A DNA stretch of 64,000 nucleotides from Heterodontus francisci (Eukaryota): positions 11,188,550 through 11,252,549 of the forward strand of contig NC_090404.1 in the NCBI RefSeq assembly GCF_036365525.1. Reading direction: 5' to 3'. The notes beneath the pieces are model-generated. The model was not told the DNA's origin. It searched no databases and worked only from the letters and a program-made list of their open reading frames with translations. Below, piece after piece: positions 26,989 to 62,978 of this stretch. Within the stretch, counting starts at the first letter, position 1, and each line of letters starts with the position of its first letter. The position numbers and the translations under genes are program-made.

Positions 26989-27380
26989 TTAAAGATCTGC
27001 GGGAACCATCCGTGTCTGTCCTCCTGCCCCTGGCAGAAGATGTCTCTGCTCAGAGGTTTCTCTCCCTCACTTGCTTAGTGAGAGGTTTCTCCCCCCGAGA
27101 GATCTTCATCAAGTGGACCGTCAATGACAAGTCGGTGAATCCCGGCAACTACAAGAACACTGAGGTGATGGCAAGGAACGACGATAGCTCCTACTTCATC
27201 TACAGCCTGTTATCCATTGCAGCGGAGGAGTGGGCCAGCGGCACTTCTTACTCCTGTGTGGTGGGACATGAGGCGACCCCCTTGAAGATCATCAACAGAA
27301 CAGTTAATAAATCGAGCGGTAAACTGAGTTTTGTGAACATTTCCCTTGCTCTATTGAACACTGTCAATTCATGTCAATGA
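26989..27380 (+). CDS. IGHM: IgM heavy-chain Cmu4 exon plus secretory tailpiece
   Basis: Acceptor TTTTCTGCAG|TT; C1-set domain [38 protein letters not shown]; tailpiece [20 protein letters not shown] with NIS sequon and penultimate Cys, matching shark mu as I recall it; internal donor G|GTAAA at 27318/27319 for the membrane form. Confidence 0.95.
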
Positions 27381-27408
27381 AAATCTCTCGATTGCATTTC
27401 AGATCTTA

Positions 27409-27425
27409 AATAAAACACCAATAAA
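27409..27425 (+). terminator. Tandem polyadenylation signals for secreted mu
   Basis: AATAAA at 27409-27414 and 27420-27425, just after the stop codon. Confidence 0.8.
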
Positions 27426-27856
27426 GGACTTTTCTTCCAATCACGATTTAAGTACATAACCGTTCAATTAATTTTGCTTCCCACATTTGCTAAGTGTAGG
27501 TCTATTCATCTAAAGTGAGGTGTTTGCAGGTCTCCGGCGCAAGTCTTGTTGAACCAGTGCTCTCAGCTCAGATAGACCACATGTTCGCAACAGAAGAAAG
27601 CTGAGTAATCTCAGGATTCTGTACCGTAAATTCTGCAACTTGTTGCCTTTTATTGGGAGGGGCCAGGGTGGAATTGTGTAATATGAAATTTTCCCTTTTC
27701 TGACAAACACCCGCAGCGCATTTAGATCTCGGTGTTTCTGTGTCTCGTGTTGTCCATCCCTTCAGAATTGGTGTGAGTTTTAAGTTGCAGCATCGCACAC
27801 ACCAGGAGCTAAAATTAGGCCACAGACGAATACGAACTATACCCAAAATGTCCCAT

Positions 27857-28090
27857 CAGAAAGAGGGGAAAGGACAATTTATTAACCCACTGAAACTCTA
27901 CTTCCTAAACAGAGAAAGGGAAAGGACAATTGTTAATCTATTGTAACTCCACATCTCCAATAGAGAGAGGGCAAAGGCAATGGTGAACCGACTGCAGCCC
28001 ATTGCATTCTTCAACAGAGAAAGGAGCAAGGGCATTTGTTAACCCACTATACTTCCACTCCCACGGCAGAGAGATTGGAAGGCAACGGCT
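27857..28090 (+). repeat. Degenerate ~52-bp tandem repeat, 4-5 copies
   Basis: Recurring AGAGA(A/G)AGG..AAGG.CAA..GTTAACCCACT. Confidence 0.6.
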
Positions 28091-28479
28091 CTCTATTATA
28101 TGGACTCAATTGCCATTAGTGCAACGCCAGCTTCTAGCTCACTGTGCGAAGGTTTTAAGCTTTCCACATGGAAATCATATTGTAAGCTACATATATATAC
28201 ATAATATCTTTAAACTTTTCCTTGTTAATCTTATTCGAACAGATTGAATTCTAATAGTCCAATTCTAACTGGCGATAGAATCCTCCTCTGCTTTTTTCAC
28301 GCTTGTATTCCTGATGTTTCTGAGGCCCAGCAGTTGCATTGCTGCATGCATTCAGCTGATGTCATATTACATCTCGCACAGAATGCATTCATACACAGGA
28401 CAGCGAAGAATATTCTCTGCAATGCACACCGTCAAGGCCAGACCCGGTTATTGGTTCTCTTTGGAACTTTGAAAAATAA

Positions 28480-32030: not shown

Positions 32031-32582
32031 CGAAAGCAGAATTCAAATGCACTATTTGAACAGATACCGTCTCCAACATTTTCCATCATACATCACAGTG
32101 AAGCAATGTTCTCACTTAGAAACTGAGATGAATTAATGATTTGCCAACCACTTTCATCACAAATAAACAAACAGGATTGGAACTCTTATCCGATCCCTTA
32201 CCCAGCAACACTGTCAATTTCCAAATAAGTAGCTATCTGAACCTATCTTCAAAATAATTGTTATCGATCAGTAAACCTCCATCGATATCGCACCATAATA
32301 ATCCCTTAGGATAGAACAAAACCAATCCAAAATAAAATAGCGCCTGACATTGAAGAAAAAAAACTGACATATTTTCCAACAGGGCCTAGGCGAGGATCAT
32401 AAGGGTTGAACGCTGAGGAGTTAATGGCAGAAATAGATTGCTGAACGTGATTAACTTAACAATAGATATGCATTGAAGATCAAATTGAAGAACTGAAGGA
32501 AGAAAACTGAATGCAAAATAGCAATCTTATATCCTGCATTAATAAACGATATAAATACATTTGTTCCTCTACATCCCCATAG

Positions 32583-32710
32583 ATTCCTCACACCACATCT
32601 GGATTGAAGACAATGAGGAAGAGAGGGACAACACCTGGACAACCGCTTCCACATTCATCATCCTGTTCTTCCTGAGCATTTTCTACAGTGCTGCCGTCAC
32701 TCTGGTGAAG
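32583..32710 (+). CDS. IGHM: IgM transmembrane exon TM1
   Basis: AG|AT...AAG|GTGAGA; in phase with the Cmu4 internal donor; encodes (D)SSHHIWIEDNEEERDNTWTTASTFIILFFLSIFYSAAVTLVK with the conserved antigen-receptor TM (CART) residues; missed by the ORF track. Confidence 0.95.
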
Positions 32711-32855
32711 GTGAGAATATTCAAACCACTCATACTTTAGTTTCACTGAAACCGTTTGACAAATCTCTAAAAGTTTCAGAGATTTAAGAAAAACTCTGAG
32801 ATGAATGTCCCGGAACATGAAATCTCTGCTTTATTCTTTTATCCCTCTTTTACAG

Positions 32856-32864
32856 GTCAAGTGA
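32856..32864 (+). CDS. IGHM: IgM TM2 exon (VK-stop; cytoplasmic KVK)
   Basis: Polypyrimidine tract plus TACAG|GTC AAG TGA. Confidence 0.9.
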   Translation, partial: VK

Positions 32865-34208
32865 TCGATTGAATTTCGGCCGCCCTGGATTTTGCTCATT
32901 TTTTTAACATCTCTGCATGATCAAAAAAAAAACCTCCAAAAGTAAAATGCTTTCAGTTTATGGTTCCGAATCTATAGCTGAGAAACTCGTAAACATTATT
33001 TCAGTTTTTCTGTTTGAAATTTCTGAGATAATCGTGGCTATAATGTAAATGTACCTTCGAGTTTCACCATTGTCTGATTTTCATGTGTCAATAGGTAACT
33101 ATTCTTCAGTCACAATTGTTTCCTTTCCTTTATGTTGAGCCCCTGTTTTTTCTCTCTGGTCTCTCACAGTTTTATAGACAGCTGGCAACTCAGACTGCAT
33201 GTGTACTATTCCCAATGTGACGATCAGTTGTTATTATTCATTTTGAACCTTCAGTGTAAAATATTCCTTTTGAAAATAGTTAGTAAATTTTGAATAACAA
33301 ATGGAATAAGTTGCACTTTGCTGAATTCCTTGATCCAATGCCCATCCACACGCTCACTTTTCCCTGTTACATATTTTTCCCCTTTCTTGACCAGTCCTGT
33401 CTGGGTTGTGTTTGCGCCCAAGGCCCTTTGGTAAAAGAGCCGCTGCGCCATCCAGAGTCCCATCAGAGTAAACACACCTTTTCCTCTGATTAATTATACC
33501 AATCTTCAGAGACAAAATGACTGCACAGCGACCAGGAGCACCTCACTCTCATCTTATGGTCTGTCACAGTCACATGCCAGGTTATAACAAAGAGCAGCGC
33601 TCTGCTCCATCACAGCCTGACATAGTATAGTATATGGAACATATGGTACATACAGTGTATGTCCCATCAAACTTTTCCAGGGAAGACATGGCATGGATTA
33701 GATACAGAGTAAAGCTCCCTATACATTGTCCCATCAAAGACTGCCAGGACAGGCAGGGGCCAGGTTAAATAAAGAATAAAGCTCAAATACTGGCAATTAT
33801 TCCAAGAGCCTTGGGTCCATCTGACACGCCAGGGAGCACAAACTCGAGGAATGCTCCCGGAGCCTGGGGATTATTTAATGCACCAGAGTGATTTCCAAAG
33901 CCTGAATCCTATGTGAAAAACAAGGAAGCAAAAGTGGTGGGATGATTCCCAGAGCTTGGGGCCTATCTGGCACAAGAGAGAACATAAACTGTGGGAATGA
34001 TTACCGGAGTCTAAGGCCTATCCAATACAGAGACTTAATCTTCACATTTTCTGTTTTGCACACAAACATACACTCTCCAACTGCTCTGTCAGATACAAAA
34101 ACACACTCCAATTTTCTGTTATGCACACGGCGACTCTCTGCCTCCCCCTTTTCTGTTATACTCGGTACCCCTGGCGCTCTGTCATATGTTTGCCTGATGA
34201 CCTTTCTC

Positions 34209-34470
34209 TCTGCTCTGCTCCATTCCCGTCGATACGATCTCCCTGAACTCACAGGACACCACCCCACGGATCTTCTTTCCCTGCTCCGTTCCTTCTGATG
34301 GTATCTCCATGAACTCACCGATCATCACCCCAGGGATCTTATCTCCCTGCTCCATTCTGTCTGGTACCATCTCTCTGAACACACTGGTCATCACCCCAGA
34401 GTTCCTCTCTCCCTGCTTAATTCCTCTCATACCATCTTCCTGAACTCATTGAACATCACCCCAGGATTCG
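34209..34470 (+). repeat. ~66-bp tandem repeat, 4 copies
   Basis: CCCTGCTCC.TTC...ATCTCC.TGAACTCAC...CATCACCCCAG repeated; 22-aa periodicity in minus-strand ORF 34182-34430. Confidence 0.8.
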
Positions 34471-34649
34471 TCAGTGACCGTCACACCTTCTCTTCCTGAG
34501 CTTTCACTCCACCCACTTCACCATCTCATCAGATTTTTCAGAGACCCCCGGCCACTGAAGAGGTTTCTGATCAGACCCGAGTATCTCCGATATTTTCCTT
34601 CTGAAGCAGAACCACATTTATCTGAACAATTCTGTGACGTTTAGTTGTA

Positions 34650-37600
34650 GATCGGAAGATTGGACAGAATTTAAAGACCAGAAAAGAATGACTAAAAAAG
34701 GGAGGTGGAAAATTAGCGTACGAGAGAAAGCTACCTGGAAATATAAATCAGGTAGAAAGAGTTTCTGGAATTCTTTGAAAAGGGAAAGAGTAAAACAAAA
34801 GTGAGTGTCGGTCCTCTGGAGAGTGAATCTGGGGAATTAAAAATGGGAAATGAGGAAATGGCAAAAGCGTTGACTAGATATTTTGTGTCTGTCTTCAACA
34901 CAGAAGACACACATAACATCCTAGACATACTCTAAATCAAGAGGTGAAAGGAAGGGCAGAACTTAAATCACCAGGTAAAGGGTACTGAGAGAACTATTGG
35001 GACTAAAGGCTAACAAGTCCCCAGGACCTGATGAACTTCATCTTGGGGTCTTAAGTGATTGCGGAGATAATAGATGCATTGGTTGTAATTTTCCTAAAAT
35101 CCCTAGATTCTGGAAAGGTCCCATCAAATTGTAAAATAGACCAATATGGCCCCCCTATTCCAGAAAGGAGATAGACAGAAAGCAGGCAACTACAGGTCAG
35201 TTAGCCTAATATCTATCACAGGGAAAATGCTCGAATCTTTCATTAAGGCGATAATAGCAGGGCACTTAGAAAATCTTAATGCAATCAGGCAAATTGAACA
35301 TAGTTTGTGAAAGGGAAATCATGTTTATTTATAATTTATTAGAGTTCTTCAAGGAAATAACAAGCAACGTAGACAAAGGTGAACATATTGATGTGGTGTC
35401 CTTGGATGTCCAAAAGACGTTTTGTAAGGTGCCACATCAAAGGTTACTGCACAAAATAAGAACGCATGATGTAGGGGTAACATATTAGCTTGGATAAAGG
35501 ACTGCTTAGATAACGGGAAGCAGAGAGTAGGGATGCATGGCTCATGTTTGGGTTGGCAAGCTGTAACTAGTAGACTGCCACAGGGATCACTGCTGGGGCC
35601 TCAACAATTTACAATCTATATCAATGACTTGGATGAAGGGACCAAATGTATGGTTGCTAAATTTGCTGATGATGCTGAGATAGATAGGAAAGTAAGTTGT
35701 GGGGACATAAGCAGTTTACAAAGGGATACAGATAGGTTAACTAACTGGCTAAAAATTGGCAGGTGGAATATAATGTGGAAAATGTGAACTTGTCCACTTT
35801 GGTAGGATGAATAGAAAAGCAGCATATCATTTAAATGGAGAGAGATTGCAGAACTCTGAAATGCAGAGGCACCAGAATATCCTGGTACATGAGTCACAAA
35901 AAGTTAGTATGCAGGAACAGCAAGTGATTAGGAAGACAAATTGGATATTATCGTTTACTGCAAGGGGAACGGAATATAAAAGTAAGGATCTTTTGCTACA
36001 ATTGTAAAGGGCGTTGGTGAGACCACATCTGGAGTACTGTGTACAGTTTTGGTTTTCTTACTTAAGAACTGTCCCTGTGGAAACAGGCGGACAATTGAAT
36101 CTCGAGGGTGAAATATCAGACCGCAAAAGACACCTTTCATAAAAGAAAAATAACGACATTTATTTATGTAACGCCATTTGGGATTGCATGACATCCAAAA
36201 GTGCTTTACGGCTGATGAAATAATTTTCAGGTGCTGTTCCTGTTGCAATGCAGAAATAATTATTTACACAGAGGGATCTATAGAATCGTAGAATAGTTAC
36301 AGTGCAAAAGGAGGCCAGTTGGCCCCGTCTCTCGGCAAGTTCAACTCAGCTCGTCCCACACTCCCGCATTTTCCTTGTAGCCCTGCAAATATTTTCTCTT
36401 CAGGTAAATATCTAATTCTCTTTTGAAGGCCTCTATTGAACCTGCCTCCACCACACTGTCAGGCAGTGCATTCCAGATCCTAACCACTTGTTGTGTAAAG
36501 ACATCTTTTCCCTCATATCGCCATTGCTTCTTTTGCCATTCAACTTAAACTGGTGTTCTCTGGTTCTCGATCCTTTAGCCAATGGACAGCTTCTCTCTGT
36601 CCCCTCATGACTTTGAACACCTCCATCAAATATCCTCTCAATCGCTTCCCCAAGGAGGACAGCACCAGCTTCTCCAATCTATCCATGGAACAGAAGTTCC
36701 TCACACCTGGAACCATTCTCATAAATATTTTCTGCACACCCTCTCTAAGGCCTTCACATCCTTCCTAAAGTGAGGTGCCCACAACTTGACTCAATACTCC
36801 AGTTGAACCGAACCAGTGCATTATGCAGGTTTATCATAACCTCCTTGCTTTTGTACTCCATGCCTCTATTTATAAGTCCCAGCATCCCGTATGTTCTATT
36901 AACCACTCTCACAACATGCCCTGCAAACTTCAATGATTTGCCCACATATACACCAGTCCCTCTGCTCTTTTAGAATTGTGTCCTTTATTTTACATGAGAA
37001 CATAAGAATTAGGAGCAGGAGTAGGTCACTCGGCTCCTCGAGCTTGCTCCCCCATTCAACAAGTTCATGGCTGATCTAATCATAACCTCAACTCCACATT
37101 CCAGCCTACCCCGGATAACCATTCACTCGCTTGTTTATGAAGAATCTAGTTACCTCTGTCTTAAAAATATTCAAAGACTTTGCTTCCACGACCTTTTGAA
37201 GAAGAGAATGCCAAACACTCACGAACCTCTGAGAGAAAGAAAATCTCCTCATCTCTGTCTTATTTGGATGACCCTTTATTTTTAAGATGTGATCCCCAGT
37301 TCTAGATTCCCCCACAAGAGGAAATATCCTTTCCACATCCACTCTGTCAAGACGTCTCGGGATTTTATCTGTTTCAAAGAAGTCGCCTCTTACTGTTCCA
37401 AATTCCAGCGGATTAGTCCAGTAAATCTTCTCTATACTGCCTCCAACGCATTTACATCCTTCCTTAAATAAGGAGATCAATACTGTAAAAAATACTCCAG
37501 ATGTGGTCTCACCAATGCCCTCATTTGCCTGATCTTTTCCCACTCACATAACCTGTTTATAATCCCCTTGTAACCTCCTTCTGCCCTCTTCACAACGTAT

Positions 37601-38600
37601 TTTCCTACCTATCTTTGTGTCATCAGCAAATTTATCAACCATACCTTCGGTTCCTTCATCAAGTCATTTATATAAATTGTTAGAAGTTGAGGTCCAAGTT
37701 TTGATCCATTGGCACTCCTTTTGTTACAGCTTACAATTGAAGGCGGCAGGACAGGTTGAGAAAGCAGGTAATCATGTATTTCCTTCATTTTCTTTCATGG
37801 GATGTGGGCATTGCTGGCAAGGCCAGCATTTGTTGCCCATCCCTAATTGCCCTTAAACTGAGTGGCTTGTTAGGCCACTTCAGAGCACAGTTAAGAAACA
37901 ACCACATTGTTGTGGGTCTAGAGTCACATACAGGCCAAACCAGATTAGGACAGCAGATTTCCTTTCATAACGGAAATTCATGAATCAAATGGGGTTTTAA
38001 AACAATCGATGATAAGTTCATGGCACCAATATTGACACTGGCTCTCAACTTCAGATTCCCGTTAATTAATTGATTTTAAATTTCACCAGCTGCTTTGGTG
38101 GGATTTTAACCTATGCCCTCAGGATTTTATATTTGGCTTCTGGATTACTATGCCTGTGATATTCTCACTATCCCACCGTCTGCCATCGAGAAAGATCGAT
38201 ATATTGCCTCTCCTCGTTCACCCTACCTAAATGAATCACGTCATACTTCATTGCATTAAATTTCAACTGACACTTGTCCATCCATTCCACCAGCCTGTCT
38301 ATGTCCTCTTGAAGTCTATCCCTATCTTCCTCACAGTTCACAATTGTGCCCTGTACGCCCAACTCTCTGTCATTAATATATCCAGAAAACCAGTTGTCGT
38401 AACATTGACCCCTGGTGAACCGCACTACAAACCTTCCTCCAGTCCAAAAAACAACTGATCACCATTACTCTCTCTTTCTTCTCACTCAGATAATTTTGCA
38501 TCCATGCTGCTACTATCCCTTTTATCCCATGAGCTCGAACGCTGTTGACAAGCCTGTTATATGGAACTTTATCAAATGCCTTTTGGAATCAATATGCATC
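34650..38600. mobile_element. Series of decayed CR1-group LINE fragments on both strands
   Basis: KVPHQRLL, LPQGSLLGP, KFADD and TRG/FFSQR peptides with stops and frameshifts. Confidence 0.8.
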
Positions 38601-38609
38601 TTGGCATTT

Positions 38610-41600
38610 CTTCACGGATGAAGATTTTAAGAAGGTTGTCTTCATCGGTTGTAGTCCAGCTGGTGGCTAGTCAGGCCTATCCATGACCGGTAGATTCTCC
38701 CACAGCGGGTACAAGTGAAGGTGTAGTCGCTGCTGGGGGCAATTGGATCTATCCTTCTCCTCATTTTCTCTTTCATGCTAGATCTTCACTCAGTATCAAA
38801 GGTGTCAGGAGCACTTCTGATGTAGCATCTCCAGGCACCACGATCTATGGCCTGTGCTTCCCACTGGCGATGGTCAATGTGTCACACAGAGAACGACTTC
38901 TTCAGGGAGTCCTTGAAAGGTTTGCATGGGGCCTCTCTTTCCTTTGAACAGTGGTCAGCTCTCCATACAACACGATCTTGGGCAGGCGACTTGTCATCCA
39001 TCCAGGCAACGTGACCAGCCCAACGTACTTTGCTTTGCAGGAAGATGGCCTCGATGCTCGTGATGTTGGCTGCTCCAGGACTTCAATTGTTGTGATCCTG
39101 CCAGTGGATCTTGAGGATGATGCAGAGGCAGTGCTGATGGAAGTGCTTTAGGAGGCGTACATGACAGCGGTATAGGACCCATAACTCGGCGCCATACAGA
39201 AGGGTGGTGAGGACTACGACGTTATCCACTTTACATTTGGTCTGCGCTCTGAGCCTGTAGTTGCTCCACACTTGTTTGTAGAGTCTGACAAATATAGTGC
39301 TTGCTTTTAAAAGCCTATTGTCCACTTCCTTGTCCATGGTGGCATCAAACGAGATGACACTCCCAAAATTGGTAAATTGCTTGATGGCATTCAATTCAGT
39401 TCCCTCGATGACAATGCTTGGTGGTCTATGTTCTTCTTGGGCTGTAGGCTGATGCAGGACTTCAGTTTTAGAACATTACAGCGCAGTACAGGCCCTTCGG
39501 CCCTCGATGTTGCGCCTACCTGTGAAACCATCTGACCTACATTATTCCATTTTCATCCATATGTCTATCCAATGACCACTTAAATGCCCTTAAAGTTGGC
39601 GAGTCTACTACTGTTGCAGGCAGGGCGCTCCACGCCCCTACTACTCTCTGAGTAAAGAAACTACCTCGAACATCTGTCCTATATCTATCACCCCTCAACT
39701 TAAAGCTATGTCCCCTCGTGTTTGCCATCACCATCCGAGGTAAAAGACTCTCACTATCCACCCTATCTAACCCTCTGATTATCTTATATGTCTCTATTAA
39801 GTCACCTCTCCTCCTCCTTCTCTCCAACGAAAACAACCTCAAGTCCCTCAGCCTTTCCTTGTAAGACCTTCCCTTCATACCAGGCAACATCCTAGTAAAT
39901 CTCCTCTGCACCCTTTCCAAAGCTTCCACATCTTTCCTATAATGCGGTGACCAGAACTGCACGCAATACTCCAGGTGCGGTCTCATCAGAGTTTTGTAAA
40001 GCTGCAGCATGACCTCGTGGCTCCGAAACTCGATCCCCCTACTAATAAAAGCTAACACACCATATGTCTTCTTAACAGCCCTATTAACCTGGGTAGCAAC
40101 TTTCAGGGATTTATGTACCTGGACACCAAGATCTCTCTGTTAATCTACACTACCAAGAATATTCCCATGAGCCCAGTACTCTGCATTCCTATTACTCCTT
40201 CCAAAGTGAATCACCTCACACTTTTCTGCATTAAACTCCATTTGCCATCTCTCAGCCCAGCTCTGCAGCCTATCTATGTCCCTCTGTACCCTACAACATC
40301 CTTCGGCACTATCCACAACTCCACCGACCTTCGTGTCATCCGCAAATTTACTAACCCACCCTTCTACACCCTCATCCAGGTCATTTATAAAAATGACAAA
40401 CAGCAGTGGCCCCAAAACAGATCCTTGCGGTACACCACTAGTAACTAAACTCCAGGATGGACATTTGCCATCAACCACCACCCACTGTCTTCTTTCAGCT
40501 AGCCAATTTCTGATCCAAAGCTCTGAATCACCTTCAACCCCATACTTCCGTATTTTCTGCAATAGCCTACCGTGGGGAACCTTATCAAACGCCTTACTGA
40601 AATCCATATACACCACATCCACTGCTTTACCCTCATCCACCTGTTTGGTCACCTTCTCGAAAAACTCAATAAGGTTTGTGAGGCACGACCTACCCTTCAT
40701 AAAACCGTGCTGACTATCGCTAATGAACTTATTCTTTTCAAGATGATTATAAATCCTGTCTCTTATAACCTTTTCCAACATTTTACCCACAACCGAAGTA
40801 AGGCTCACAGGTCTATAATTACCAGGGCTGTCCCTACTCCCCTTCTTGAACAAGGGGACAACATTTGCTATCCTCAAGTCTTCCGGCACTATTCCTGTCG
40901 ACAATGACGACATAAAGATCAAGGACAAAGGCTCTGCAATCTCCTCCCTGGCTTCCCAGAGAATCCTAGGATAAATCCCATCTGGCCCAGGGGACTTATC
41001 TATTTTCACACTTTCCAAAATTGCTAACACCTCCTCCTTGTAAACCTCAATCCCATCTAGCCTAGTAGTCTGAATCTCAGTATTCTCCTCGACAACATTT
41101 TCTTTCTCTACTGTAAATACTGACGAAAAATATTCATTTAACACTTCCCCTATCTCCTCTGATTCCACACACAACTTCCCACTACTATCCTTGATTGGCC
41201 CTAATCTAACTCTAGTCATTCTTTTATTCCTGATATACCTATAGAAAGCCTTAGGGTTTTCCTTGATCCTATCCGCCAATGACTTCTCGTGTCCTCTCCT
41301 TGCTCTTCTTAGCTCTCCCTTTAGATCCTTCCTGGCTAGCTTGTAACTCTCAAGCACCCTAACTGAGCCTTCACGTCTCATCCTAACATAAGCCTTCTTC
41401 TTCCTTTTGACAAGCGCTTCAACTTCTTTAGTAAACCACGACTCCCTCGCTCGACAACTTCCTCCCTGCCTGACAGGTACATACTTATCAAGGACACGCA
41501 GTAGCTGCTCCTTGAATAAGCTCCACATTTCGATTGTGCCCATCCCCTGCAGTTTCCTTCCCCATCCTACGCATCCTAAATCTTGCCTAATCGCATCATA

Positions 41601-43180: not shown

Positions 43181-44275
43181 GCCAATATACATCACATCAA
43201 CAGTATTATGCTCATCCACCATCTCTGTAACCTCTTCAAAAATACTCAGGCAAGTTAGTTAAACATGATTTTCCTTTACAAATCCGTGCTGGATTTCCTT
43301 AATTAATCCGAAAATGCCTAAGTGACTGGCAATTTTGTTTTGAGTTATAATTTCTAAAAGCTTCCCTACCACCAAGGCTGAACTGACTGGCCTGGACTTA
43401 TCCTTACACCATTTTTTGAACAAATGTGTAACATTACAATTATCCAGTTTTCTGGCACCACCCCTGTAACGTAGGAGGATTGGAAAATTATGGCCAGTTC
43501 CACCGCAATTTCTACCCTTACTTATCTCAGTATCCTTGGATGTATCTCATCCAGTCCTGGTGACCTAAGTACAGTCAGTCTATATAATATCTCCTCTTCA
43601 TGAATCTTCAGCCCATCCGGTGTCTCAGCTACCTCCTCTTTCACTGTGTGCAGCATCTTCTTCCATGATAAGGACAAATGCAAAGTGCTCATTTAGTATC
43701 TCAGGTATGTCTGCTAATCTATGCCCAATTAATTATTTTTACCCTGTATTCACCCTTGGCCATTTCCATGGCCAAGCTAAACCTCATCATACTATGATCG
43801 CTGTCCCCTAAATGTTCTCCTGCTGATATTTGATCCACTTGACTCATCTCATTCCCCAGAGCCAGATCCAGTCATGTCTCCTTTCTCGTTGGAATGGAAT
43901 CATACTGATGTAGAAAATTCGCCTGAACAGAATCTAGAAACTCTTGCTCCTCTCTGCCCTTTACGCTATTACTATCTCAGTCTATATGTGGAGAATTAAA
44001 TGTTCACATTATAACTGCTGTATAATTCTTGGACATCCCTGTCATTTCCTTGCACATTTGCTCCTCTATATATTTCCCATTAGTTGGTGGCCTATAAAAT
44101 GCACCCAGCAATGTAATGGTACCTCTATTGTTTCTCAGCTGTAACCAAATAGAATCTGCCCTTGATCTCTCTCTCTCTAGCCCTGTAATATTCAGCTTAT
44201 CAAACTTCTATCCCTCCCACTTACTTTCCTTCCCTATATTTCCTAAACACCTTGTATTCTGAGAACATCTAATTC
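43180..44275 (-). mobile_element. Decayed CR1 LINE
   Basis: Degenerate RT/APE-region similarity to neighbouring copies. Confidence 0.65.
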
Positions 44276-48520: not shown

Positions 48521-49334
48521 GGATTCTCAGTTTATCAGCGAAACTGTTGCATGATCATGTTGAATTATTACTATGCTAGAGTACTACAGTTGTCATTGTT
48601 TTATTCTTAATATTACTGTAACTGCTGTCATGTTATTGTTTTGCTCTTACCACCGTTGTTATTTTATATTAATTCTGAGATTTCTTGACTCAGTTTTCTG
48701 GAGTGCCCGAGTCACGAGCACATTACATGTGTATTTGTAGACATTAGAAGGACTTCACATTAATAATTCCTCAGTTCATATGATTGGATTTATAATTCGG
48801 TAAGAATAGAAGTCTCTCGACCTCTCGAATCATCAAATACGGAGATCAAGCTACCTTCAGTAAATTCATGATGCAAAGCTGACTAATATTTTGCTATTGA
48901 AGTTTAATCTGTACGTTGAATTGAAACACCATATATATATAAACGAATTTCATTGCATATCAAACAATACCAGTCGGGAACGTTTGGAGTTGGGAAAAGA
49001 GCAAAGCCCTCTGTGCACTGCCTAATCACACACTGCCAGAGCAGGTACAGCATGGCTTAGATACAGAGTAAAGCTCCCTCTACACTGTCCCATCAAATAC
49101 TCCCAGGACAGGTACAGCACGGGATAATAAACAGAGAGTTTCTGCCTGGATCGGGCCCGATGAGGCATGAAATGGTGAAAAAATAAATGCAATTCCAAGT
49201 AAACAGTAAGCATTATTTTATTATGTTAAAATAATGACCCTGATAAGGTACTTACACATTTTAATTACATTATTGTTGATTTTACTTTTATTGCACACGC
49301 CTCTGGAACCTCTCCTCACACCCCATGTCCAGTG

Positions 49335-49654
49335 AGTTCCTGCAGAGGCGCCTTATATCTTTGTTTCACTGTGTCTCACTGCACTCTAATGCACCACAGT
49401 GTCTGACAGCCGAGCCATGTTAACGGTGAGAGTGGTGCAGCCGTTCTCACTGTCCACAGATATTTTAAACCTTCCCTCAACTCTCTCACCTCTGAATGTG
49501 GAAATGAGACACTGGGGAGCTTGATTGGAGCACTGCCGGTACCAGAATACAAATGCTTTTTTGGTGAAAATAGCGTTGTGTTGAAGTGAAATGTTTTGTC
49601 CTTCGGTTCCTTGATGTACCAACATCTGGAATGTCTCCGAGTGACAAGGAACAG
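49335..49654 (-). pseudogene. TCR alpha/delta-type V pseudogene V1 with 23-RSS
   Basis: V-set frame ...FWYRQ..QAPQCLI..GRFKISVD..TLTV..RLSDTVVH*SAVR; both canonical Cys lost, one stop, acceptor AG lost; RSS CACAGTG(49367-73)-23-GCAGGAACT. Confidence 0.85.
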
Positions 49655-49794
49655 TTGTCAAAGCAGGATCAATAATTAACATAATGATGTATGTAAAGAG
49701 AATTAATACAGGCAAAATGGGCTAATCTACATATCTATCGATCGAACGATCTACCTACATTCCAGGCTATCCATCGATAATCTATCTATCTCGC

Positions 49795-50553: not shown

Positions 50554-51012
50554 AGATATTGTGCAACTGGATCCGCTCTTTGCCTCACTGCGTCCCCATA
50601 GCACAGTGGTACAGTCCGGCGCCTTGGCTCGCGGTGCCATCTACAGAGATGGTGTTGGACTTCTTTACTCGGTCCAAGGACAGTGTGTAGCTTCCTTAGT
50701 CTCAGTTCCCTCTTATATGGAGCCGATAAATGTCGGTGCCGCTGTCACTGTTTGTCTGTACCAGGTGTTCCCAGCAGCAATGGAGAGCCGGCAGTCCAGT
50801 TCAGCCCGTTCCCCTTCCCGAGACACCACCTGCTCAGGGTGTAAGCTCGATCCTCACACTGAACTGCTGTGAACTAAACAAAATCACTCAACAACCACAA
50901 GGTATTAAGAAATTGGTGAAATAAGGCATCTGATCAGATAAATAAACTCACACAACATCAACAGCACCAGACCTCCAAATGGAAACAGGTTTTTGTGGAG
51001 GTTTCTGTTCAT
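50554..51012 (-). pseudogene. TCR V pseudogene V2 (leader plus V)
   Basis: Leader MNRNLHKNLFPFGGLVLLML with GTGAGT donor; V ..EGERAELDC..WYRQ..APTFIGSI*..GLYHCAMG with frameshifts; RSS CGCAGTG (broken CAC, 50586-92)-23-ACAATATCT. Confidence 0.85.
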
Positions 51013-53486: not shown

Positions 53487-54044
53487 AGTTATTGAACAGG
53501 ATGAGCCACCGTTTGCCACAATGTACATCTTCCCACAGTAATATGGCCCGGTGTCCGGAAATGTTATAACTTTTCTTTCTGTCAAGAAAAATTCTGAACC
53601 TTCCGTTCATGTCGGTTATTATGCCCTGATAGACGGAGATTATAAATTTCTACGCCCGGTCCGGTAACTGTCGTAGTCCAAACATTGTGTCTGGTGGTGT
53701 TATCGCACCGGATTTGAACCGCTTGTCCCTATCACCGCCGTCACCAGATCGGTTTGGGACATCCCGTCCTCTCCACGGACCCCTGTTAATAGAAGACAAA
53801 CATGGAAAACTCGCAATTGCTTTAATTTCCTACCCAGCCGTCTTAATTCAGAATAGCCTCATGAGAATAAAACGGTGAATGTCCCATTTGGATGTCTTGT
53901 ATTTGAGGATATTGATTTTGAAACCACAATAATATCAATTGTCTCAGAATCCGCCAGCATCGTTGAATAAGTAGCTTTACCTTGTTTAATTTGCCAGCGC
54001 CTGACGCCAGCGCCGCCACCAGTTAGAGCTTTGTTCTTCAGCAT
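53487..54044 (-). pseudogene. TCR V pseudogene V3 (leader 53981-54044; V exon 53526-53782)
   Basis: AG|GG VRGEDGMSQTDLVTAV/QAVQIRC..VW/RQLPDRA*KFIISVY..NGRFRIFLDRKKS/DTGPYYCGKM with frameshifts and a stop; RSS TACATTG(53519-25)-23-TCAATAACT. Confidence 0.8.
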
Positions 54045-55436: not shown

Positions 55437-55916
55437 ATGAAGCTGAGCTTCACTTTAGTTATTATCTCCCTGGATTTCTTACTCTGCCCTCTGCGTGAGT
55501 GTGGTTAATATTGTCAGGAATATTTTACCCTTCATATATATATATAATATTGTATTCTGTTCTGTTGTATTTTATTGTGCTATGTTATTTTGCATTGTGT
55601 TGTGTCATATGAATTATGTATTATATCTGCATATTCTTCTCAGATGCCGCTGGTAATGAAGAGGTATCACAGTCTCCTGAGTCAGTGGTTGTTACCGAGG
55701 GAGACACTGCATCGTTGAACTGTTCCACCACAGTAGCAGGACGGATCCTACAATGGTACAGACAATACCCGGATAGAACCATGCAGCACCTGGCGAGCGG
55801 TAGCAGTGATCAGGACAGGATCACTGCTCGGTTTATTTCAGCAGAGAAGCGCAGTTCTCTGACTGTGAGGGGTGCTCGAGTGACAGACACCGCCACCTAT
55901 TTTTGTGCAGTGGAGG
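55437..55916 (+). CDS. TRAV: TCR alpha/delta-type V gene V4, apparently functional (leader 55437-55494; V exon 55644-55916)
   Basis: Leader MKLSFTLVIISLDFLLCPL, phase-1 GT-AG intron; VSQSPESVVVTEGDTASLNC..WYRQ..DTATYFCAVE; alpha versus delta assignment not certain. Confidence 0.9.
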
Positions 55917-55955
55917 CACAGTGTAGCAAAGATCAGCAGGGATCGTACAAAAACC
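55917..55955 (+). promoter_or_regulatory. 23-RSS of V4 (perfect consensus)
   Basis: CACAGTG-23 bp-ACAAAAACC. Confidence 0.95.
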
Positions 55956-56516: not shown

Positions 56517-56555
56517 GGTTTGTGTACGGGGTCATGGCTTTTATCTGACGCTGTG
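56517..56555 (-). promoter_or_regulatory. 23-RSS of V5
   Basis: CACAGCG-23 bp-ACACAAACC. Confidence 0.9.
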
Positions 56556-57056
56556 CCTCACTGCACAGTAATAGACCGCTCCGTCCTCCACACTCAGGCT
56601 GCTTATATTGAGGTAACCGTTCTTTTTAGACTTGTCAGCAGCCGCCAGATATCGCCCTGAGATTTCGTTTTCCTTAATTGCTACTAGTTTGCTAATAATC
56701 CAGCTTGGAGGCTGTGCAGGTTTCTGCCAATACCATTGCATACTTTCAATAACCTGAGCTGTATATTCGCAATCTAACTGCACCGAACCGCCTTCTGACA
56801 CGGTCATTGTCACCGGAGATTGAGTTACTGGATCTGCACATAGTCCACCTGTGAAGGAAGAGGAATATAAAACAGCAGGTTAAACAGAATCGATCTAAAC
56901 TTGCGTCTATCTGTATAAGTATGTGTAACCTTTCATCTCCCCAGCTAATTACATTCAATCCCAGTGCAAACTCTTTGCATCAATCTGCTAACCTGCCTTG
57001 ATTATTCTAATCCAGTACTTACTGTCCAACACAGCCGTCAGTATTATCAGAAGCAT
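56556..57056 (-). CDS. TRAV: TCR alpha/delta-type V gene V5, apparently functional (leader 57023-57056; V exon 56556-56848)
   Basis: Leader MLLIILTAVLD|SGLCA; DPVTQSPVTMTVSEGGSVQLDCEY..WYWQKP..DGAVYYCAVR. Confidence 0.9.
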
Positions 57057-58309: not shown

Positions 58310-58808
58310 ATGGGGAACTGTCTCTCACCGCTTCTCATCATTATATCACTTCTCAGTAAGTATCTCCTTCCCAGTAAAAGTCCATTCTCTCCCAGACTGC
58401 TGTAACCCAGATGTTATCGTTGGTACAATAATAGATGGTGATGACTTTTATGTTAATCAATATGAGACCAATTCTGATTGGTGATATTACTATTTTTATG
58501 TTAGAATGGAGCCACCAAGACACAGTAGAACAGACGGTTGCTGAAATAACGGTTGAAGAGGGATGTAACGTCACACTAACCTGCACCTTGAAAACAAGTG
58601 ATTCCAACCCTTATGTGTACTGGTACAGTCAGCACCCCGAACAGCCTCCACACTACATGCTTCATGTTATTGGAGGGGATATATACAGGAACACCGACAT
58701 CACTGTTCGGTTCTCGGCTACGTTCAATAAAACTGACAAGATTACCGAACTAACAATCAGCAATGCCCTGATCTCAGACACTGCTGTGTATTTCTGTGCC
58801 ATGGAGCC
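58310..58808 (+). CDS. TCR alpha/delta-type V gene V6, open frame (leader 58310-58355; V exon 58505-58808)
   Basis: Leader MGNCLSPLLIIISLL; DTVEQ..EEGCNVTLTC..YVYWYSQHP..RFSATF..LTISNALISDTAVYFCAME. Confidence 0.9.
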
Positions 58809-58848
58809 CACACTGCTGCAGAGATAAGGCGGATCCCGTACAAAAACC
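58809..58848 (+). promoter_or_regulatory. RSS of V6 with 24-bp spacer
   Basis: CACACTG-24 bp-ACAAAAACC. Confidence 0.85.
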
Positions 58849-58871
58849 ACACTGAGCTTTCTACTTACCGC

Positions 58872-58885
58872 TCAGCAGAGGGCGC
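58872..58885 (+). promoter_or_regulatory. CTCF-type motif just 3' of the V6 RSS (others at 52757-70, 55108-21, 57148-61, 57250-63, 59792-805, 61955-68, 62394-407)
   Basis: TCAGCAGAGGGCGC versus core CCASYAGRKGGCRS. Confidence 0.65.
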
Positions 58886-60242
58886 TCTCACGCCGATAAA
58901 CAGAGGCAGTAACTCAGCGTCTGCAGTGAGAATCAGGGAGATTCTTAAAACTGCAACAAAGCACAACCCTCAACAACAGGCGAGATCTACATGCGCAATT
59001 ATCTCACTTTGTGACTGTAAATTGCATTCATCATAAAAATGAGCTTTAAAAATCGATGACTGCTGCCTTTATTCACCTTTTGTCTTTCGATGCCCTTTCC
59101 CGACCTACTTATTCCTTATCACAGCCTGTTTCCACTCCTGACCCAGCATTGTGTGCATTTCCTTCTTCCTGTGTTTGGTTTACAGATATAACACTCTGCT
59201 AAATCTCCGGAGGTTTATTCAGAACCACTCCGGCCCAGCTGCCCATAGATTCAACGCTGGCTTAAACCGACTTCACTCATGGAGATTTTGCTTATTATTG
59301 CATAACATAATAATCCTGAAAGTCCGGTCCCGAGCCTGCATTCGCCCACTACGTCATGAATGTGAAAGTGCCGCAGCTCCTATAGAAAGGCAAAGTTGTA
59401 TAATTTTCGAAAGAGACAACATTGTTTAATTCCGTTCCTTACAAGTGGCTACTCCAAGTGACAGCACTGCCTGCGGCAGCCCCGCCCACAGTTTCCATTG
59501 CTGCTGTCTCTCTGACCCGCCGCCCATACCCTGTGCAGTTGGAGATATTGCTACTGTTGTTCCCTGTCTGACCCTTGACATTCCCGGTCTCCACTTTTCC
59601 CCCATAATCGTTTAAACTTCCCTTTTCCGGTCTTCAGTTTAGCAACATAAATTATTCGCTTTTGCTCGGCGTATTACTCGAGAACTGCTGCAGCTCAGCT
59701 TCCTATGAGCATGCACTGTCACGTAAGGACACTCAATAAACAAGAGCGTCTCACACCCTGTCCACCGACATCTGAATGTTTCTTAGAATATTCACCAGGG
59801 GGCAGCAGATCACCGTATTCGCGATGTTTCCATTCACTGACATCCAGCTCACCACGTACTGGTCTCACAGCACCACTGGGGACACTAGGAAGTGAGGTGA
59901 AAGAATCCTGAGACTCGACAGCAGATTATTGAGGGTGGGGATTAGAACTGGTCTCTTCACGTATGTTTCTGTGCTGGATCTGCCTCTCTGATTGGATTCT
60001 GCAGTTTGTTTTCTCGGCCTTTCCTGGAAACAGTTATCGAGTCATAGAGAGATACAGCACTGAAACAGGCCCGTCGGCCTGACCAACAACCAACCATGGG
60101 TGGCAGTTTGATCCGAGGTTAATTTGGTTTCCTCCCAGTGTGTGTTTGAGCGCCTGACAGCGCGCTGCACATTGTGGCTGCATCTGCCCGCGATTCTACA
60201 AAACCCCAAACAGACAGGAGCTCACACCCACAGTCCCAAGAC

Positions 60243-60281
60243 AGTTTTTGTACAGGGGTGAGACTGCTTTCCATCACTGTG
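60243..60281 (-). promoter_or_regulatory. 23-RSS of V7
   Basis: CACAGTG-23 bp-ACAAAAACT. Confidence 0.93.
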
Positions 60282-60746
60282 AGTCTGAGAGCGCAGTAAT
60301 ACACGGCAGCATCAGTCAGCTGCAGACTCGAGATGGTTAAACTGGTGAATTTAGTCGCGGTTTGGAGCTCAGCAGTGAAACGGGTTTTAGCAAAATCTGC
60401 TTCGCCTTCACCAGTAATTGAATGTTTCCACAGTATAAACTCGGGCTGTGTATCTGGGTGTTGCCGGTACCAGTATAAGCTATAGCTGCTCATTGTGGCA
60501 TCATAGGTGCAGTTGAAAGTCGCCGCTTCTCCTTGTGTCTTAACAACTGAGGACAGGAGCTGAATGATAGAATCTCCATTAATAAAATCTGAAAAACATG
60601 TTTTAACAGGAAAAGTTCAAACCAAGGCTGTTTAAAATTCAGAGTTAAAACATGTTTGTGAAATGAGAGAAAAGATTAAATGTGTTTTGTCCACAATTAC
60701 CTGTCAAAAATGCTCCCCACACAACACAGATGCTGAGTAGCTGCAT
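60282..60746 (-). CDS. TRDV: TCR delta/alpha-type V gene V7, apparently functional (leader 60701-60746; V exon 60282-60588)
   Basis: Leader MQLLSICVVWGAFLT; DSIIQLLSSVVKTQGEAATFNCTY..YSLYWYRQHPDTQPEFIL..RFTAEL..SLTISSLQLTDAAVYYCALR; delta assignment tentative. Confidence 0.9.
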
Positions 60747-62431
60747 TGTCGCTGTCCACTCTGTAAAAGGGGAGTTGGATATTTGAAGACACCCGTTCTA
60801 ATCCCCACCCTCAATAATCTGCTGTCATGTCTCAGGATTCTCTCACCTCACTTCCTTGTGTCTCCAGTGGTGCTGTGGGAGCGGCAGGCGGTAAACTGGC
60901 TTCCGGTGAATGGAATCACCCGAGCTGGGCGACTGTGTCACTGTCCTTATATGGGGAATGGTTCCGCTGTTAGAGACGTGGGGCGGGGACTGAAACTCTT
61001 GTCTGGTTATTGTAACCAGAAACATGGGATTGTTACTGGATTTGGATCATTCTGGCGTTAATTCTTCTTCTCTAATTCCAGCATCTTCACTATCAGCAGA
61101 CTGGTAACTGTGACTCGAGTGAGATTTCCCTCACCAATCAATTAACTTGTGAATTAACAATGATTACTTATTTTATCAGAGTGATTTATAGATCTCTCAC
61201 ATTAAAACGATGATCTCTGCTTGTTACTGAACAAACAACTGAACAGACATAAAAAGAATAAACTCTCACTCTTATTTGAAAAGTGTTTCCAGCACTGTGG
61301 TTTACATTTAACATGATGCTTGCATCCTTCTTCTTGAATTCCAACACTATTTTTGTTCGTAATTGTTAAATATATCATTCATAATCTTCAGACTTTGGAT
61401 TTGCGATGAACGACAATAGAGGGAACGGCGCATTGGTGTTTTTAAGCAATTCGCCGCTCATCGGTTGAAAGTGGCGGTAGGAGAGCGCGGGGAATGGGTT
61501 CAAAGCCTTCAAGATGAGGTGTAGGGGAGTTCTCATTAACAAGAACCCAACACCAGCAGGACACGAAAAACTGTTGTCACGACTTTCACCCAGAATATAA
61601 AAAGGAGTGGAGCAGAAAAAGAAACTAAATACAGGTGGTTTCGCTTGCTCTTTCCCTCCTTTAACATTGATCTCCACTAAGGGTACAGCGAGTGATTTCA
61701 GAAATCAAAAACAGGGTCGCTGTCATTGACAGTTCAATATTCTTTTCCCCCATCTTCCACACTTTCCACTCACTTGTCCTGCCCACTGGTTAGTGTCAAT
61801 CCTTCGATACGTGGATGCATCTTTGTGAGGATTATTGTCCGATGTAGCTTCCCAACTCATTGAGTAAAATTGATTTCAACTATTAAACTTCTTGGAGAAA
61901 CCGAAATCACCTCGCTGCCCGGGGTCTGATCCAAAAAGGGAACATTATTTTCTGCCGCCCTCTGGCGGCTATACTGAGAAGTGGTCCGATGGCAGTGAAC
62001 AGGGTGCCTGATCTGGCAGCTCCTGTTTATAGAAAGCTGGATCGGAGTGGTTCTGAATTTATATGCCGAGCAGAAACAAAGGTTTTTAAACTAATAAACT
62101 GAAGACTGGAAGAAGGAAATGTGTTCAGATATGGGTAAAGAATGGATACAGACGATAATGAGGAGCAAGGAGACAGCGAAAGAGCGCAGAAAAACAAAAA
62201 TGGTGTTAAGGCATCACAGATTGAAAATAAAGTTAATTTTTCGTGTAAATGCGCGTTGTAATCTCAAACTTATATAACTATACAAGTGGACATCGGTTGC
62301 TCTTGCTGATTGTTGTGTTTTATTGCAATCTTAAGAAGGTCCCTGTGACTCACAGAGGAGGCTGAATTATTGCTTCTGTTTATCGGTGTGAGGGCGCCCT
62401 CTGGTGAGCTCTAACTGGAGTTCTCAGTGTG

Positions 62432-62978
62432 CGTTTTTGTCCGAGATCCGCCATTTCTCTGCACCAATGTCAAGCTCATGGCACAGAAATACATGGCGGT
62501 GTCAGAGATCAGTGTGTTGTGGATCGTTAGATAGGTAATCTTGACAATTTTGCTAAAAGGAGAAGAGAATCGGTCAGTGAAGTCGGGTTCCGTAGAGATA
62601 AAACACGTACTGTTTAGGCTGCCCGGAGTGCTGACTGTACCAAAACATAGAAGGGGTAGAAATGCTTGTTTTCCAGGTACAGGTTAGTGTGATATTACTT
62701 TCCTCTTCATCCATCATTTCGGGAACCGGCTGTTCCATTGTGTCTTAGTGGCTCCATTCAAAAATACAAAAAACAGTAACAGTCACAATGAGCATCAACA
62801 TCATATGGATCAATATAACCGTCAACACCACTATCATTGGCACGTCACCTATAGAAACAGCTCCACTATGGCAGACAAGGTTGGGGTGGGGGGAGGGAGG
62901 GGAATGGATTTTACTGGGAAGGAAATACTTACTGAGAAGTGCTATAATAATGAAAAGTGGTGTGAGACGGTTCCATAT
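62432..62978 (-). pseudogene. TCR V pseudogene V8, inverted paralog of V6
   Basis: ATG>ATA, acceptor AG>TG, CAA>TAA stop, CDR2 frameshift deletion, heptamer GACATTG, 24-bp spacer, nonamer ACAAAAACG. Confidence 0.9.

What the first reader, a model, noticed from the sequence alone, without database searches (positions are those of the whole stretch)
26989..62978. IgM heavy-chain gene end physically abuts a TCR alpha/delta V array: a B/T-cell receptor locus junction
Seen: intact Cmu4/secretory tail, TM1 and TM2 on +, then ~16.5 kb made almost entirely of LINEs, then eight TCR-type V segments with 23(24)-RSS. Established: sharks have many small V-D-D-J-C IgH clusters, and chimeric IgHV-TCRdelta rearrangements and Ig-like V genes linked to TCRAD have been reported in cartilaginous fish. 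Inference: this window is the physical seam that would let a VH upstream of this mu gene reach TCRdelta D/J in cis. It might also let TCR V segments reach IgH D/J, producing TCRV-Cmu hybrids. Six of eight V segments point toward the IgM side, so the IgM gene may sit inside the TCR recombining domain rather than merely beside it.
Basis: partly seen in the sequence, partly recalled or inferred. Interest (0 to 1): 0.8.

Follow-up and report, generated by a model that had tools for sequence, protein, structure and literature searches.

The report
Shark IgM gene tail beside TCR V genes
In the horn shark genome the last three exons of an IgM antibody gene lie 16.5 kb from eight T-cell-receptor-type V genes (four intact, four dead), a local example of an antibody/T-cell-receptor gene neighbourhood already published for other sharks in 2025.

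Summary
An intact Cmu4 exon with secretory tail, TM1 and TM2 lies on the + strand at 26989-32865. A 16.5 kb spacer follows, at least 61% of it LINE-coding sequence. Eight V segments lie at 49.3-63.0 kb, six of them on the - strand.

Three points weaken the reading.
- Only four V segments are intact (V55 and V58 on +, V56 and V60 on -). The other four, all facing the IgM side, are pseudogenes.
- No Cmu1-3, VH or J was found anywhere in the window, by tblastn, profile HMMs or motif scan (D was not searched for). The "IgM gene" here is only a tail, with no partner exons in 26,988 bases upstream. It is most likely an orphan relic.
- V56 is not clearly TCR-type. It belongs to a family between Ig and TCR V genes that is conserved in catsharks.

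RNA contigs show Cmu4-to-TM1 splicing, but the exon sequences seem to be shared with other IgM copies, so expression of this copy is not shown.

IgH clusters linked to TCR alpha/delta, with TCR-type V exons between them, were published for four elasmobranchs in 2025 (PMC12227049). This scan has noted the same layout many times elsewhere in this genome. This is a new member of a known kind, not "the seam". No evidence for chimeras was found.

The parts
26989..27380 (+). IgM Cmu4 exon with secretory tail. The internal membrane-form splice donor is at 27317/27318. AATAAA signals lie at 27410 and 27421.
   Evidence: Sequence read. Pfam C1-set 3.4e-21. 92% identity to horn shark IgM P0001. The tail aligns with other shark IgM tails.
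32582..32710 (+). IgM TM1 exon
   Evidence: Sequence read. tblastn with P0001 residues 419-461, E 2.7e-14. TM profile E 2.1e-30. RNA contig joint 27317->32582 with GT..AG ends in runs X5 and X6.
32857..32865 (+). IgM TM2 exon (two codons plus stop)
   Evidence: Sequence read. The loose end after 32712 in X5 reads the TM2 letters.
32866..49334 (.). LINE-rich spacer of about 16.5 kb. It includes a nearly full-length LINE ORF2 (endonuclease plus reverse transcriptase) at 39537-42593 on the - strand.
   Evidence: ORFs. Pfam RVT_1 and Exo_endo_phos on sister copies. 61% LINE protein coverage. No N run.
49335..49660 (-). Pseudogene V. It lacks the first Cys and has TAG where YYC should be. RSS relic at 49373-49335.
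   Evidence: Pfam V-set is only 0.0013, below the cut-off.
50554..51010 (-). Pseudogene V with leader. It has in-frame stops and a frameshift, and its heptamer is CGCAGTG.
53487..53750 (-). Decayed V remnant, frameshifted, with a degenerate RSS
55437..55955 (+). Intact V55: leader 55437-55494, V exon 55643-55916, 23-RSS 55917-55955 (perfect heptamer and nonamer). TCR alpha-like.
   Evidence: Pfam V-set 2.8e-11. The PDB best matches are TCR alpha chains.
56517..57055 (-). Intact V56: leader 57055-57022, V exon 56849-56556, 23-RSS 56555-56517. Member of a V family between Ig and TCR.
   Evidence: V-set 1.2e-17. None of the 60 listed PDB matches is named a TCR. 76% identity to catshark P0110. It branches outside the clade holding the TRA/TRD-named rows.
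58310..58848 (+). Intact V58: leader 58310-58355, V exon 58505-58808, 24-RSS 58809-58848. TCR alpha-like.
   Evidence: V-set 6.7e-16. PDB matches are TCR alpha chains. It sits in a 4-row clade (SH-aLRT 99) with a catshark 'TCR alpha chain-like' model.
60243..60745 (-). Intact V60: leader 60745-60700, V exon 60590-60282, 23-RSS 60281-60243. TCR delta V1-like.
   Evidence: V-set 1.8e-14. 43% identity to a mammalian TRDV1 model. The only TCR entries among the 60 listed PDB matches are Vdelta1 constructs. Its relative P0112 looks like a rearranged cDNA with a long CDR3.
62432..62966 (-). Pseudogene V, a paralogue of V58. It has a TAA stop, a frameshift and a broken heptamer (GACATTG).

Best explanation
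The window comes from the horn shark antigen-receptor complex, where IgM gene clusters and TCR alpha/delta V segments are interleaved.

Shown: the IgM part consists only of the last three exons (Cmu4 with secretory tail, TM1, TM2). All three are open and have correct splice and poly-A signals. There is no Cmu1-3, VH or J in the 26,988 bases upstream (D was not searched for); that stretch is LINE fragments plus a 27-bp satellite.

Inferred: this is most likely (about 60%) an orphan 3' fragment of a recently duplicated IgM cluster. It would have been cut off by rearrangement or transposon activity and still be intact only because it is young. It is less likely to be the end of a working gene.

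Shown: the V array, 16.5 kb downstream, holds four rearrangeable V segments in alternating orientation and four dead ones.

Inferred: these V segments serve TCR delta/alpha. Earlier notes place NAR-TCR cassettes 2-17 kb beyond the window's end. They would join by deletion or inversion according to their orientation.

Adjacency to IgM reflects locus history, not a demonstrated shared recombination unit.
For: - Identity of the exons.
- Absence of the rest of the gene: tblastn with five shark IgM proteins finds only Cmu4 and TM. Profile HMMs of Cmu1, Cmu2 and Cmu3 against 1,957 ORF pieces hit only the Cmu4 ORF; all other hits have E >= 0.14. A J motif is absent from all six frames. No RSS with a good 12 spacer was found.
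- Upstream content: LINEs and a 27-bp satellite at 11956-15600 and 16861-18114.
- V anatomy.
- V class.
- RNA: the Cmu4->TM1 joint is present in 2 of 3 RNA runs. There is zero RNA contig depth on the secretory 3' end (27348-27546) and on the TM 3' UTR (32721-32900; 0.73 in X6). The DNA run covers both.
- Published arrangement: PMC12227049 sections 6 and 15.
- Earlier unchecked notes report the same layout, and other headless or partial IgM relics, elsewhere in this genome. They also report V genes 14.7-27 kb before the window's start.
Against: - All three exons are fully intact.
- Cmu4 has 0 private changes at the 50 sites invariant in eight other cartilaginous-fish IgM sequences. Against sharks alone it has 3 of 67. 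This is no clear sign of decay.
- RNA contigs at 98% likeness or more cover Cmu4 and TM1 and show correct splicing. One contig runs on beyond the Cmu4 acceptor, as if spliced to an upstream exon.
- The genome is transposon-rich, so a Cmu3-Cmu4 intron longer than 27 kb is not excluded.
- The tool warns that holes in contig cover prove nothing.
- I could not see DNA outside the window.
- No TRB, TRG or IgL reference sequences were available for the tree.
Confidence: 0.6

Rival explanations
1. The IgM exons are the true 3' end of a complete, working IgM cluster. Its Cmu3 and the rest lie more than 27 kb upstream, beyond the window's start, behind an intron swollen by LINEs and satellite.
For: - The exons, splice sites and poly-A signals are intact.
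- There are no private changes at deeply conserved sites.
- RNA contigs identical to Cmu4 and TM1 show a GT..AG joint. One contig continues past the Cmu4 acceptor.
- LINE insertions are common here; the Cmu4-TM1 intron itself holds a 2.3 kb LINE.
Against: - No trace of Cmu1-3 in 26,988 bases.
- Earlier notes report V genes, not IgM exons, 14.7-30 kb before the window, and no IgM note within about 680 kb. These notes are unchecked, and a missing note is weak evidence.
- No RNA contig lies on this copy's secretory 3' end, although DNA covers it.
- Summed DNA contig depth is higher on the exons (63.6 and 406) than on the flanks (12-34). This is as expected if near-identical exon copies elsewhere supply the RNA contigs. 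The tool warns that this depth is not a copy number.
Confidence: 0.27
2. One reading: a functional B/T-receptor seam. The IgM unit lies inside the TCR recombining domain, so that VH reaches TCR delta D/J in cis and the - strand V segments join IgM D/J by inversion, giving TCR-V/Cmu hybrids.
For: - V56 and V60 are intact, carry 23-RSS and face the IgM side.
- VH-to-TCR-delta rearrangements in sharks are stated as common, and as helped by linkage, in PMC12227049.
- The topology allows inversional joining.
Against: - No VH or J of IgM was found in the window (D not searched for), so there is nothing for the V segments to join here.
- Four of the six IgM-facing V segments are dead.
- The review PMC5192425 (passages) states that Ig rearrangement occurs within clusters, not between them.
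- No chimeric transcript was sought successfully. No TCR-V/Cmu chimera is mentioned in what I read of PMC12227049: sections 6 and 15 and the passages.
Confidence: 0.05
3. The adjacency is an assembly misjoin inside the repeat-rich spacer.
For: - The spacer is at least 61% LINE.
- The only DNA run laid gave contigs of 100-377 bases, and only on 26950-32900. Nothing tested continuity across 33-49 kb.
Against: - There is no N run between 9617 and 64000.
- The same kind of adjacency is published for four species and noted repeatedly in this genome.
- V genes are noted on the other side of the IgM piece too.
Confidence: 0.05

Closest known systems
Antigen-receptor complex (AgRC) of elasmobranchs: IgM, IgW and IgNAR clusters linked to TCR alpha/delta (Flajnik et al., Sci Adv 2025, PMC12227049; sections 6 and 15 read)
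   Same: IgM constant exons lie tens of kb from TCR alpha/delta-type V exons. Some V domains are intermediate between Ig and TCR. The link to VH-to-TCR-delta rearrangement is already drawn there.
   Different: The species is not among the four analysed; 'horn shark' and 'Heterodontus' occur 0 times in the text. Here the IgM unit is only a Cmu4-TM tail. I could not see table S1 with the coordinates, because supplements are closed. PSMB5 synteny was not tested.
Horn shark IgM heavy chain C region, membrane-bound form (P0001, Heterodontus francisci)
   Same: The Cmu4 part is 92% identical over 110 residues. TM is 79% identical. The splice layout is the same.
   Different: Residues 1-308 of P0001 (Cmu1-3) have no counterpart in the window.
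Classical shark IgH minicluster VH-D1-D2-JH-Cmu (review PMC5192425, passages)
   Same: The same constant-region 3' exons and both secretory and membrane ends.
   Different: No V, J or Cmu1-3 within the window (D not searched for). It is therefore not shown to be a minicluster.
TRAV/TRDV gene segments of jawed vertebrates (for example mammalian TRDV1 model P0050 and TCR alpha chains in the PDB)
   Same: Leader-intron-V exon layout, a 23-type RSS, and best matches to TCR alpha or Vdelta1 chains for V55, V58 and V60.
   Different: V56 matches antibody V domains better and branches outside the TRA/TRD-named clade. Linkage to D-J-C was not seen in the window.
Headless or partial IgM constant relics noted elsewhere in this genome by this scan (s1-871843, s1-873634; unchecked notes)
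   Same: Incomplete IgM gene pieces lying among TCR-type V genes.
   Different: Those relics keep other exon sets (the whole constant gene, or CH1-CH2-TM). This one keeps only Cmu4-TM1-TM2.

Membership tests
IgM heavy-chain constant gene | Cmu4 C1-set domain with secretory tail (N-glycosylation site, penultimate Cys) | tested here: met
   Pfam C1-set 3.4e-21. The tail aligns with shark IgM tails, including NIS and SCQ.
IgM heavy-chain constant gene | Internal donor in Cmu4 spliced to TM1 and TM2 | tested here: met
   G|GTAAA at 27317/27318, and TM1 and TM2 with AG/GT borders. RNA contig joint 27317->32582 in X5 and X6. The joint is not specific to this copy.
IgM heavy-chain constant gene | Cmu1, Cmu2 and Cmu3 exons upstream of Cmu4 | tested here: not met
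   No match in the window by tblastn or by profile HMMs against 1,957 ORF pieces. They could lie beyond the window's start.
Shark IgH minicluster (VH-D-D-JH-C) | VH, two D and JH within a few kb, upstream of the C exons | tested here: not met
   No VH match upstream. No J motif in six frames. No good 12-spacer RSS. D was not searched for directly.
TCR alpha/delta V gene segment | Leader exon, intron, V exon with Cys-Trp-Cys, open frame | tested here: met
   Met for 4 of 8 (V55, V56, V58, V60). The other 4 are broken.
TCR alpha/delta V gene segment | 23-type RSS directly after the V exon | tested here: met
   Spacers of 23, 23, 24 and 23, with heptamer 6-7 of 7 and nonamer 8-9 of 9, in the four intact V segments. 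The pseudogenes keep only relics.
TCR alpha/delta V gene segment | Groups with TRAV/TRDV and not with VH, TRBV, TRGV or IgL V | tested here: inconclusive
   V55, V58 and V60 lie in the clade holding all 10 TRA/TRD-named rows and apart from 10 VH rows. Their best single-V PDB matches are alpha or Vdelta1. V56 falls outside that clade. No TRB, TRG or IgL references were in the tree.
TCR alpha/delta V gene segment | Linked TRD/TRA D-J-C, and use in TCR transcripts | not testable with these tools
   No D, J or C in the window. NAR-TCR cassettes 2-17 kb beyond the end are known only from unchecked notes.
Elasmobranch AgRC layout (PMC12227049) | IgH constant genes and TCR alpha/delta-type V exons on one stretch of DNA | tested here: met
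   Both lie in one gap-free stretch, 26989-62966.
Elasmobranch AgRC layout (PMC12227049) | Synteny with PSMB5, IgW, IgNAR and UrIg2 | not tested
   Outside the window.

The most novel reading that the evidence does not exclude
The intact Cmu4-TM1-TM2 cassette, stripped of Cmu1-3 and embedded among TCR-type V genes, is not a relic but a used module. In that case V56 or V60 would be brought by inversion onto an upstream D/J. Alternatively, a TCR-type V(D)J transcript would be spliced onto Cmu4-TM, giving a short membrane receptor that is part TCR V and part IgM tail.
Probability: 0.03. Interest if true: 0.8.

Novelty: new member of a known kind. Interest (0 to 1): 0.25.

Why it matters
It adds the horn shark, the species in which shark Ig gene clusters were first described (recalled), to the animals with IgM genes interleaved with TCR alpha/delta V genes. 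It also gives base-level anatomy of one junction: which V segments can still rearrange, which way they face, and that the IgM piece is only a tail. That anatomy is useful for anyone mapping how antibody and T-cell-receptor loci separated. It does not open a new question, because both the layout and its link to Ig/TCR chimeras are already in print.

Tried and rejected
Looked for the rest of the IgM gene:
- A regex for C1-set motifs on 1,228 ORFs of 30 aa or more.
- tblastn with five shark IgM proteins.
- Profile HMMs of Cmu1-3 with filters off.
All three found only Cmu4 and TM.

Looked for J segments with a six-frame FGxG motif scan. Nothing was found.

Looked for relaxed constraint in Cmu4. 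By eye several substitutions looked unusual. The count then gave 0 of 50 sites when the chimaera was included and 3 of 67 among sharks. I therefore dropped 'decay' as an argument.

Tried to class the V segments by PDB matches. Two-domain antibody constructs crowd the lists, so this is only a rough guide.

Built a V tree. It had 183 domains of stored proteins plus 4 window V segments, 101 of 149 columns were kept, and the quick method was used. Domains covering fewer than about 75 profile positions were dropped beforehand and I did not count them. The tree has no TRB, TRG or IgL references and many unresolved forks.

Looked up cluster names for ten relatives. No useful names came back.

Considered V56 as an Ig light-chain V. 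I rejected this because no J-C follows it and because the catshark model P0051 holds two such V segments in tandem. This remains weak.

Literature search for horn shark Ig/TCR locus papers: 392 papers held at least 3 of the 4 terms and 15 were listed. Only one listed paper held the species name, and it is on the bowfin genome.

The supplements of PMC12227049 (table S1) were not seen. They may show details that bear on novelty.

Full report
WHAT IS THERE

The window is cartilaginous-fish DNA. The Cmu4 exon is 92% identical in protein to the published Heterodontus francisci membrane IgM C region (P0001). Gene models of that species are the closest relatives of two V segments. Earlier notes of this scan also call the genome horn shark.

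IgM EXONS

Cmu4 is at 26989-27380 on the + strand.
- The acceptor is ...ttctgcag|TT.
- The internal donor for the membrane form is G|GTAAA at 27317/27318.
- The secretory tail has an N-glycosylation site and a penultimate Cys.
- The stop is at 27378-27380, with AATAAA at 27410 and 27421.

TM1 is at 32582-32710 and TM2 (GTCAAGTGA) at 32857-32865, both with proper borders. Pfam gives C1-set at 3.4e-21. The tail and TM align well with other shark IgM sequences. The spliced product was never joined; the exons were searched apart.

THE REST OF THE IgM GENE IS NOT IN THE WINDOW

- tblastn with five shark IgM proteins, including P0001 (Cmu1-4 plus TM), matched only Cmu4 and TM1 cognately. Cmu1-3 gave only cross-domain hits on the Cmu4 exon.
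- Profile HMMs of Cmu1, Cmu2 and Cmu3, run with filters off against all 1,957 stop-free pieces of 20 aa or more, hit only the Cmu4 reading frame. The next best E-values were 1.2, 0.43 and 0.14.
- No VH was found upstream.
- No J motif was found in six frames.
- No good 12-spacer RSS was found.

The 26,988 bases upstream hold LINE fragments (29% by protein homology). They also hold a 27-bp satellite at 11956-15600, 16861-18114 and 598-999 and two short N runs of 148 and 128 bases. I left the N runs alone. They are too short to hide three exons of about 300 bases each.

SPACER

From TM2 to the first V relic is about 16.5 kb without any N. LINE protein homology covers 61% of it. This includes a nearly full endonuclease/reverse-transcriptase ORF at 40140-42593.

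V SEGMENTS

Four are intact, each with leader exon, intron, Cys-Trp-Cys and RSS.

| V | Strand | RSS | Spacer |
|---|---|---|---|
| V55 | + | 55917-55955, perfect | 23 |
| V56 | - | 56555-56517 | 23 |
| V58 | + | 58809-58848 | 24 |
| V60 | - | 60281-60243 | 23 |

The strict RSS pattern occurs twice, against 0.00 expected in 100 shuffles.

Four are pseudogenes, all on the - strand.
- The one at 49.3-49.7 kb lacks the first Cys and has a stop in place of YYC.
- The one at 50.6-51.0 kb has stops, a frameshift and the heptamer CGCAGTG.
- The one at 53.5-53.75 kb is decayed.
- The one at 62.4-63.0 kb is a V58 paralogue with a stop, a frameshift and the heptamer GACATTG.

So only two of the six V segments that face the IgM side could rearrange.

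CLASS OF THE V SEGMENTS

- V55: the best matches are TCR alpha chains, with one delta.
- V58: the best matches are TCR alpha chains and Vdelta1.
- V60: the only TCR entries among the 60 listed are two Vdelta1 constructs, and the rest are antibody fragments. It is 43% identical to a mammalian TRDV1 model. Its relative P0112 reads like a rearranged cDNA with a long CDR3, a J and the start of a C region. Calling that delta is my inference.
- V56: none of the 60 listed matches is named a TCR.

A profile search with the four V segments found 461 proteins among 2,231 candidates. Where the 120 listed carry informative names, these are TCR alpha or alpha/delta, plus a few automatic Ig-like labels.

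In a quick tree of 187 V domains, V55, V58 and V60 lie inside the 167-row clade that holds all 10 TRA/TRD-named rows. V56, with four catshark and unnamed relatives (SH-aLRT 98), branches outside that clade, between it and the VH rows. The tree has no TRB, TRG or IgL references, so exclusion of those classes rests on the PDB lists alone.

V56 is 76% identical to a cloudy catshark model. Even the roughly 150 bases before its start codon are conserved.

READS

One search for runs and one lay were made on 26950-32900 at 98% likeness or more. Three runs guessed to be RNA (X5-X7) and one DNA run (X1) were laid. All came from one sample and were kept as contigs.

- X5 and X6 show a GT..AG joint 27317->32582 that X1 lacks. 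They are therefore RNA, and membrane-form splicing exists.
- A loose end after 32712 reads TM2.
- One X5 contig runs on beyond the Cmu4 acceptor.

This is not specific to this copy. Summed DNA contig depth is 12-34 on the flanks but 63.6 on the second half of Cmu4 and 406 on TM1. That is what near-identical exons elsewhere would give, though the tool warns that depth is not copy number.

The RNA runs have zero depth on 27348-27546, this copy's secretory 3' end. On the TM 3' UTR (32721-32900) X5 and X7 have zero and X6 has 0.73. The DNA run covers both. The tool warns that holes prove nothing.

The DNA contigs are 100-377 bases long, so contiguity of the spacer was not tested.

WHAT IS KNOWN

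Flajnik et al. 2025 (PMC12227049; abstract, sections 6 and 15, and passages read) report the following:
- Some TCR alpha/delta-type V exons lie between IgH clusters.
- Other V domains are intermediate between TCR and Ig.
- This proximity supports VH-to-TCR-delta rearrangements.

Horn shark is not mentioned (0 occurrences). Table S1 was not seen. A review (PMC5192425, passages) states that Ig rearrangement stays within a cluster.

This scan has noted the same layout on other DNA of this genome many times, from 7.5 Mb before to 1.7 Mb after this window. It has also noted headless or partial IgM relics and NAR-TCR cassettes 2-17 kb beyond this window's end. These are unchecked notes.

VERDICT

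The reading as a unique seam is not. This is one of many Ig/TCR junctions of a published kind, and it adds a species to that list.

| Reading | Probability |
|---|---|
| The IgM piece is an orphan tail | about 0.6 |
| It is the end of a complete cluster reaching beyond the window | about 0.27 |
| It is a functional chimera-making unit | about 0.05 |
| It is an assembly misjoin | about 0.05 |

Noticed in passing
window 56517-57240 (-): V56 belongs to a V family that is 64-76% identical in catsharks and an unnamed relative (P0110, P0051, P0136). It branches between the TCR alpha/delta-named V segments and VH. About 150 bases upstream of its ATG are also conserved with the catshark model: 58% identity over 64 translated positions.
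   Followed up: partly
window 55437-60745: The four intact V segments alternate in strand (+ - + -). V55/V56 and V58/V60 are convergent pairs, with their 23-type RSS ends 0.56 and 1.4 kb apart. V56/V58 are divergent, with start codons 1.25 kb apart.
   Followed up: no
window 11956-15600, 16861-18114, 598-999, 2769-3038: A 27-bp satellite (9 codons, so it gives long false ORFs such as ...VSVYITLDP...) fills more than 5 kb upstream of the IgM tail. A LINE interrupts it at 15705-16865.
   Followed up: partly
window 49804-50283: A second 27-bp tandem repeat (17.8 copies, 91% matches) lies between the first two V pseudogenes.
   Followed up: no
window 29167-31488 (-): A 2.3 kb LINE fragment lies inside the Cmu4-TM1 intron, flanked by CA/TG-rich simple sequence at about 28.4-28.85 kb and 31.5-32.0 kb. 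The intron is 5.2 kb long as a result.
   Followed up: partly
stored proteins P0113, P0121, P0127, P0140, P0142 (other sharks): Two-V gene models in other sharks. Their first V domains branch next to VH, and their second V domains lie next to the V58 group in the tree's leaf order. They may be NAR-TCR (NAR V plus supporting delta V).
   Followed up: no
window 5078-5225 and 9489-9616: Two N runs (148 and 128 bases) lie inside LINE-rich DNA. I left them untouched.
   Followed up: no
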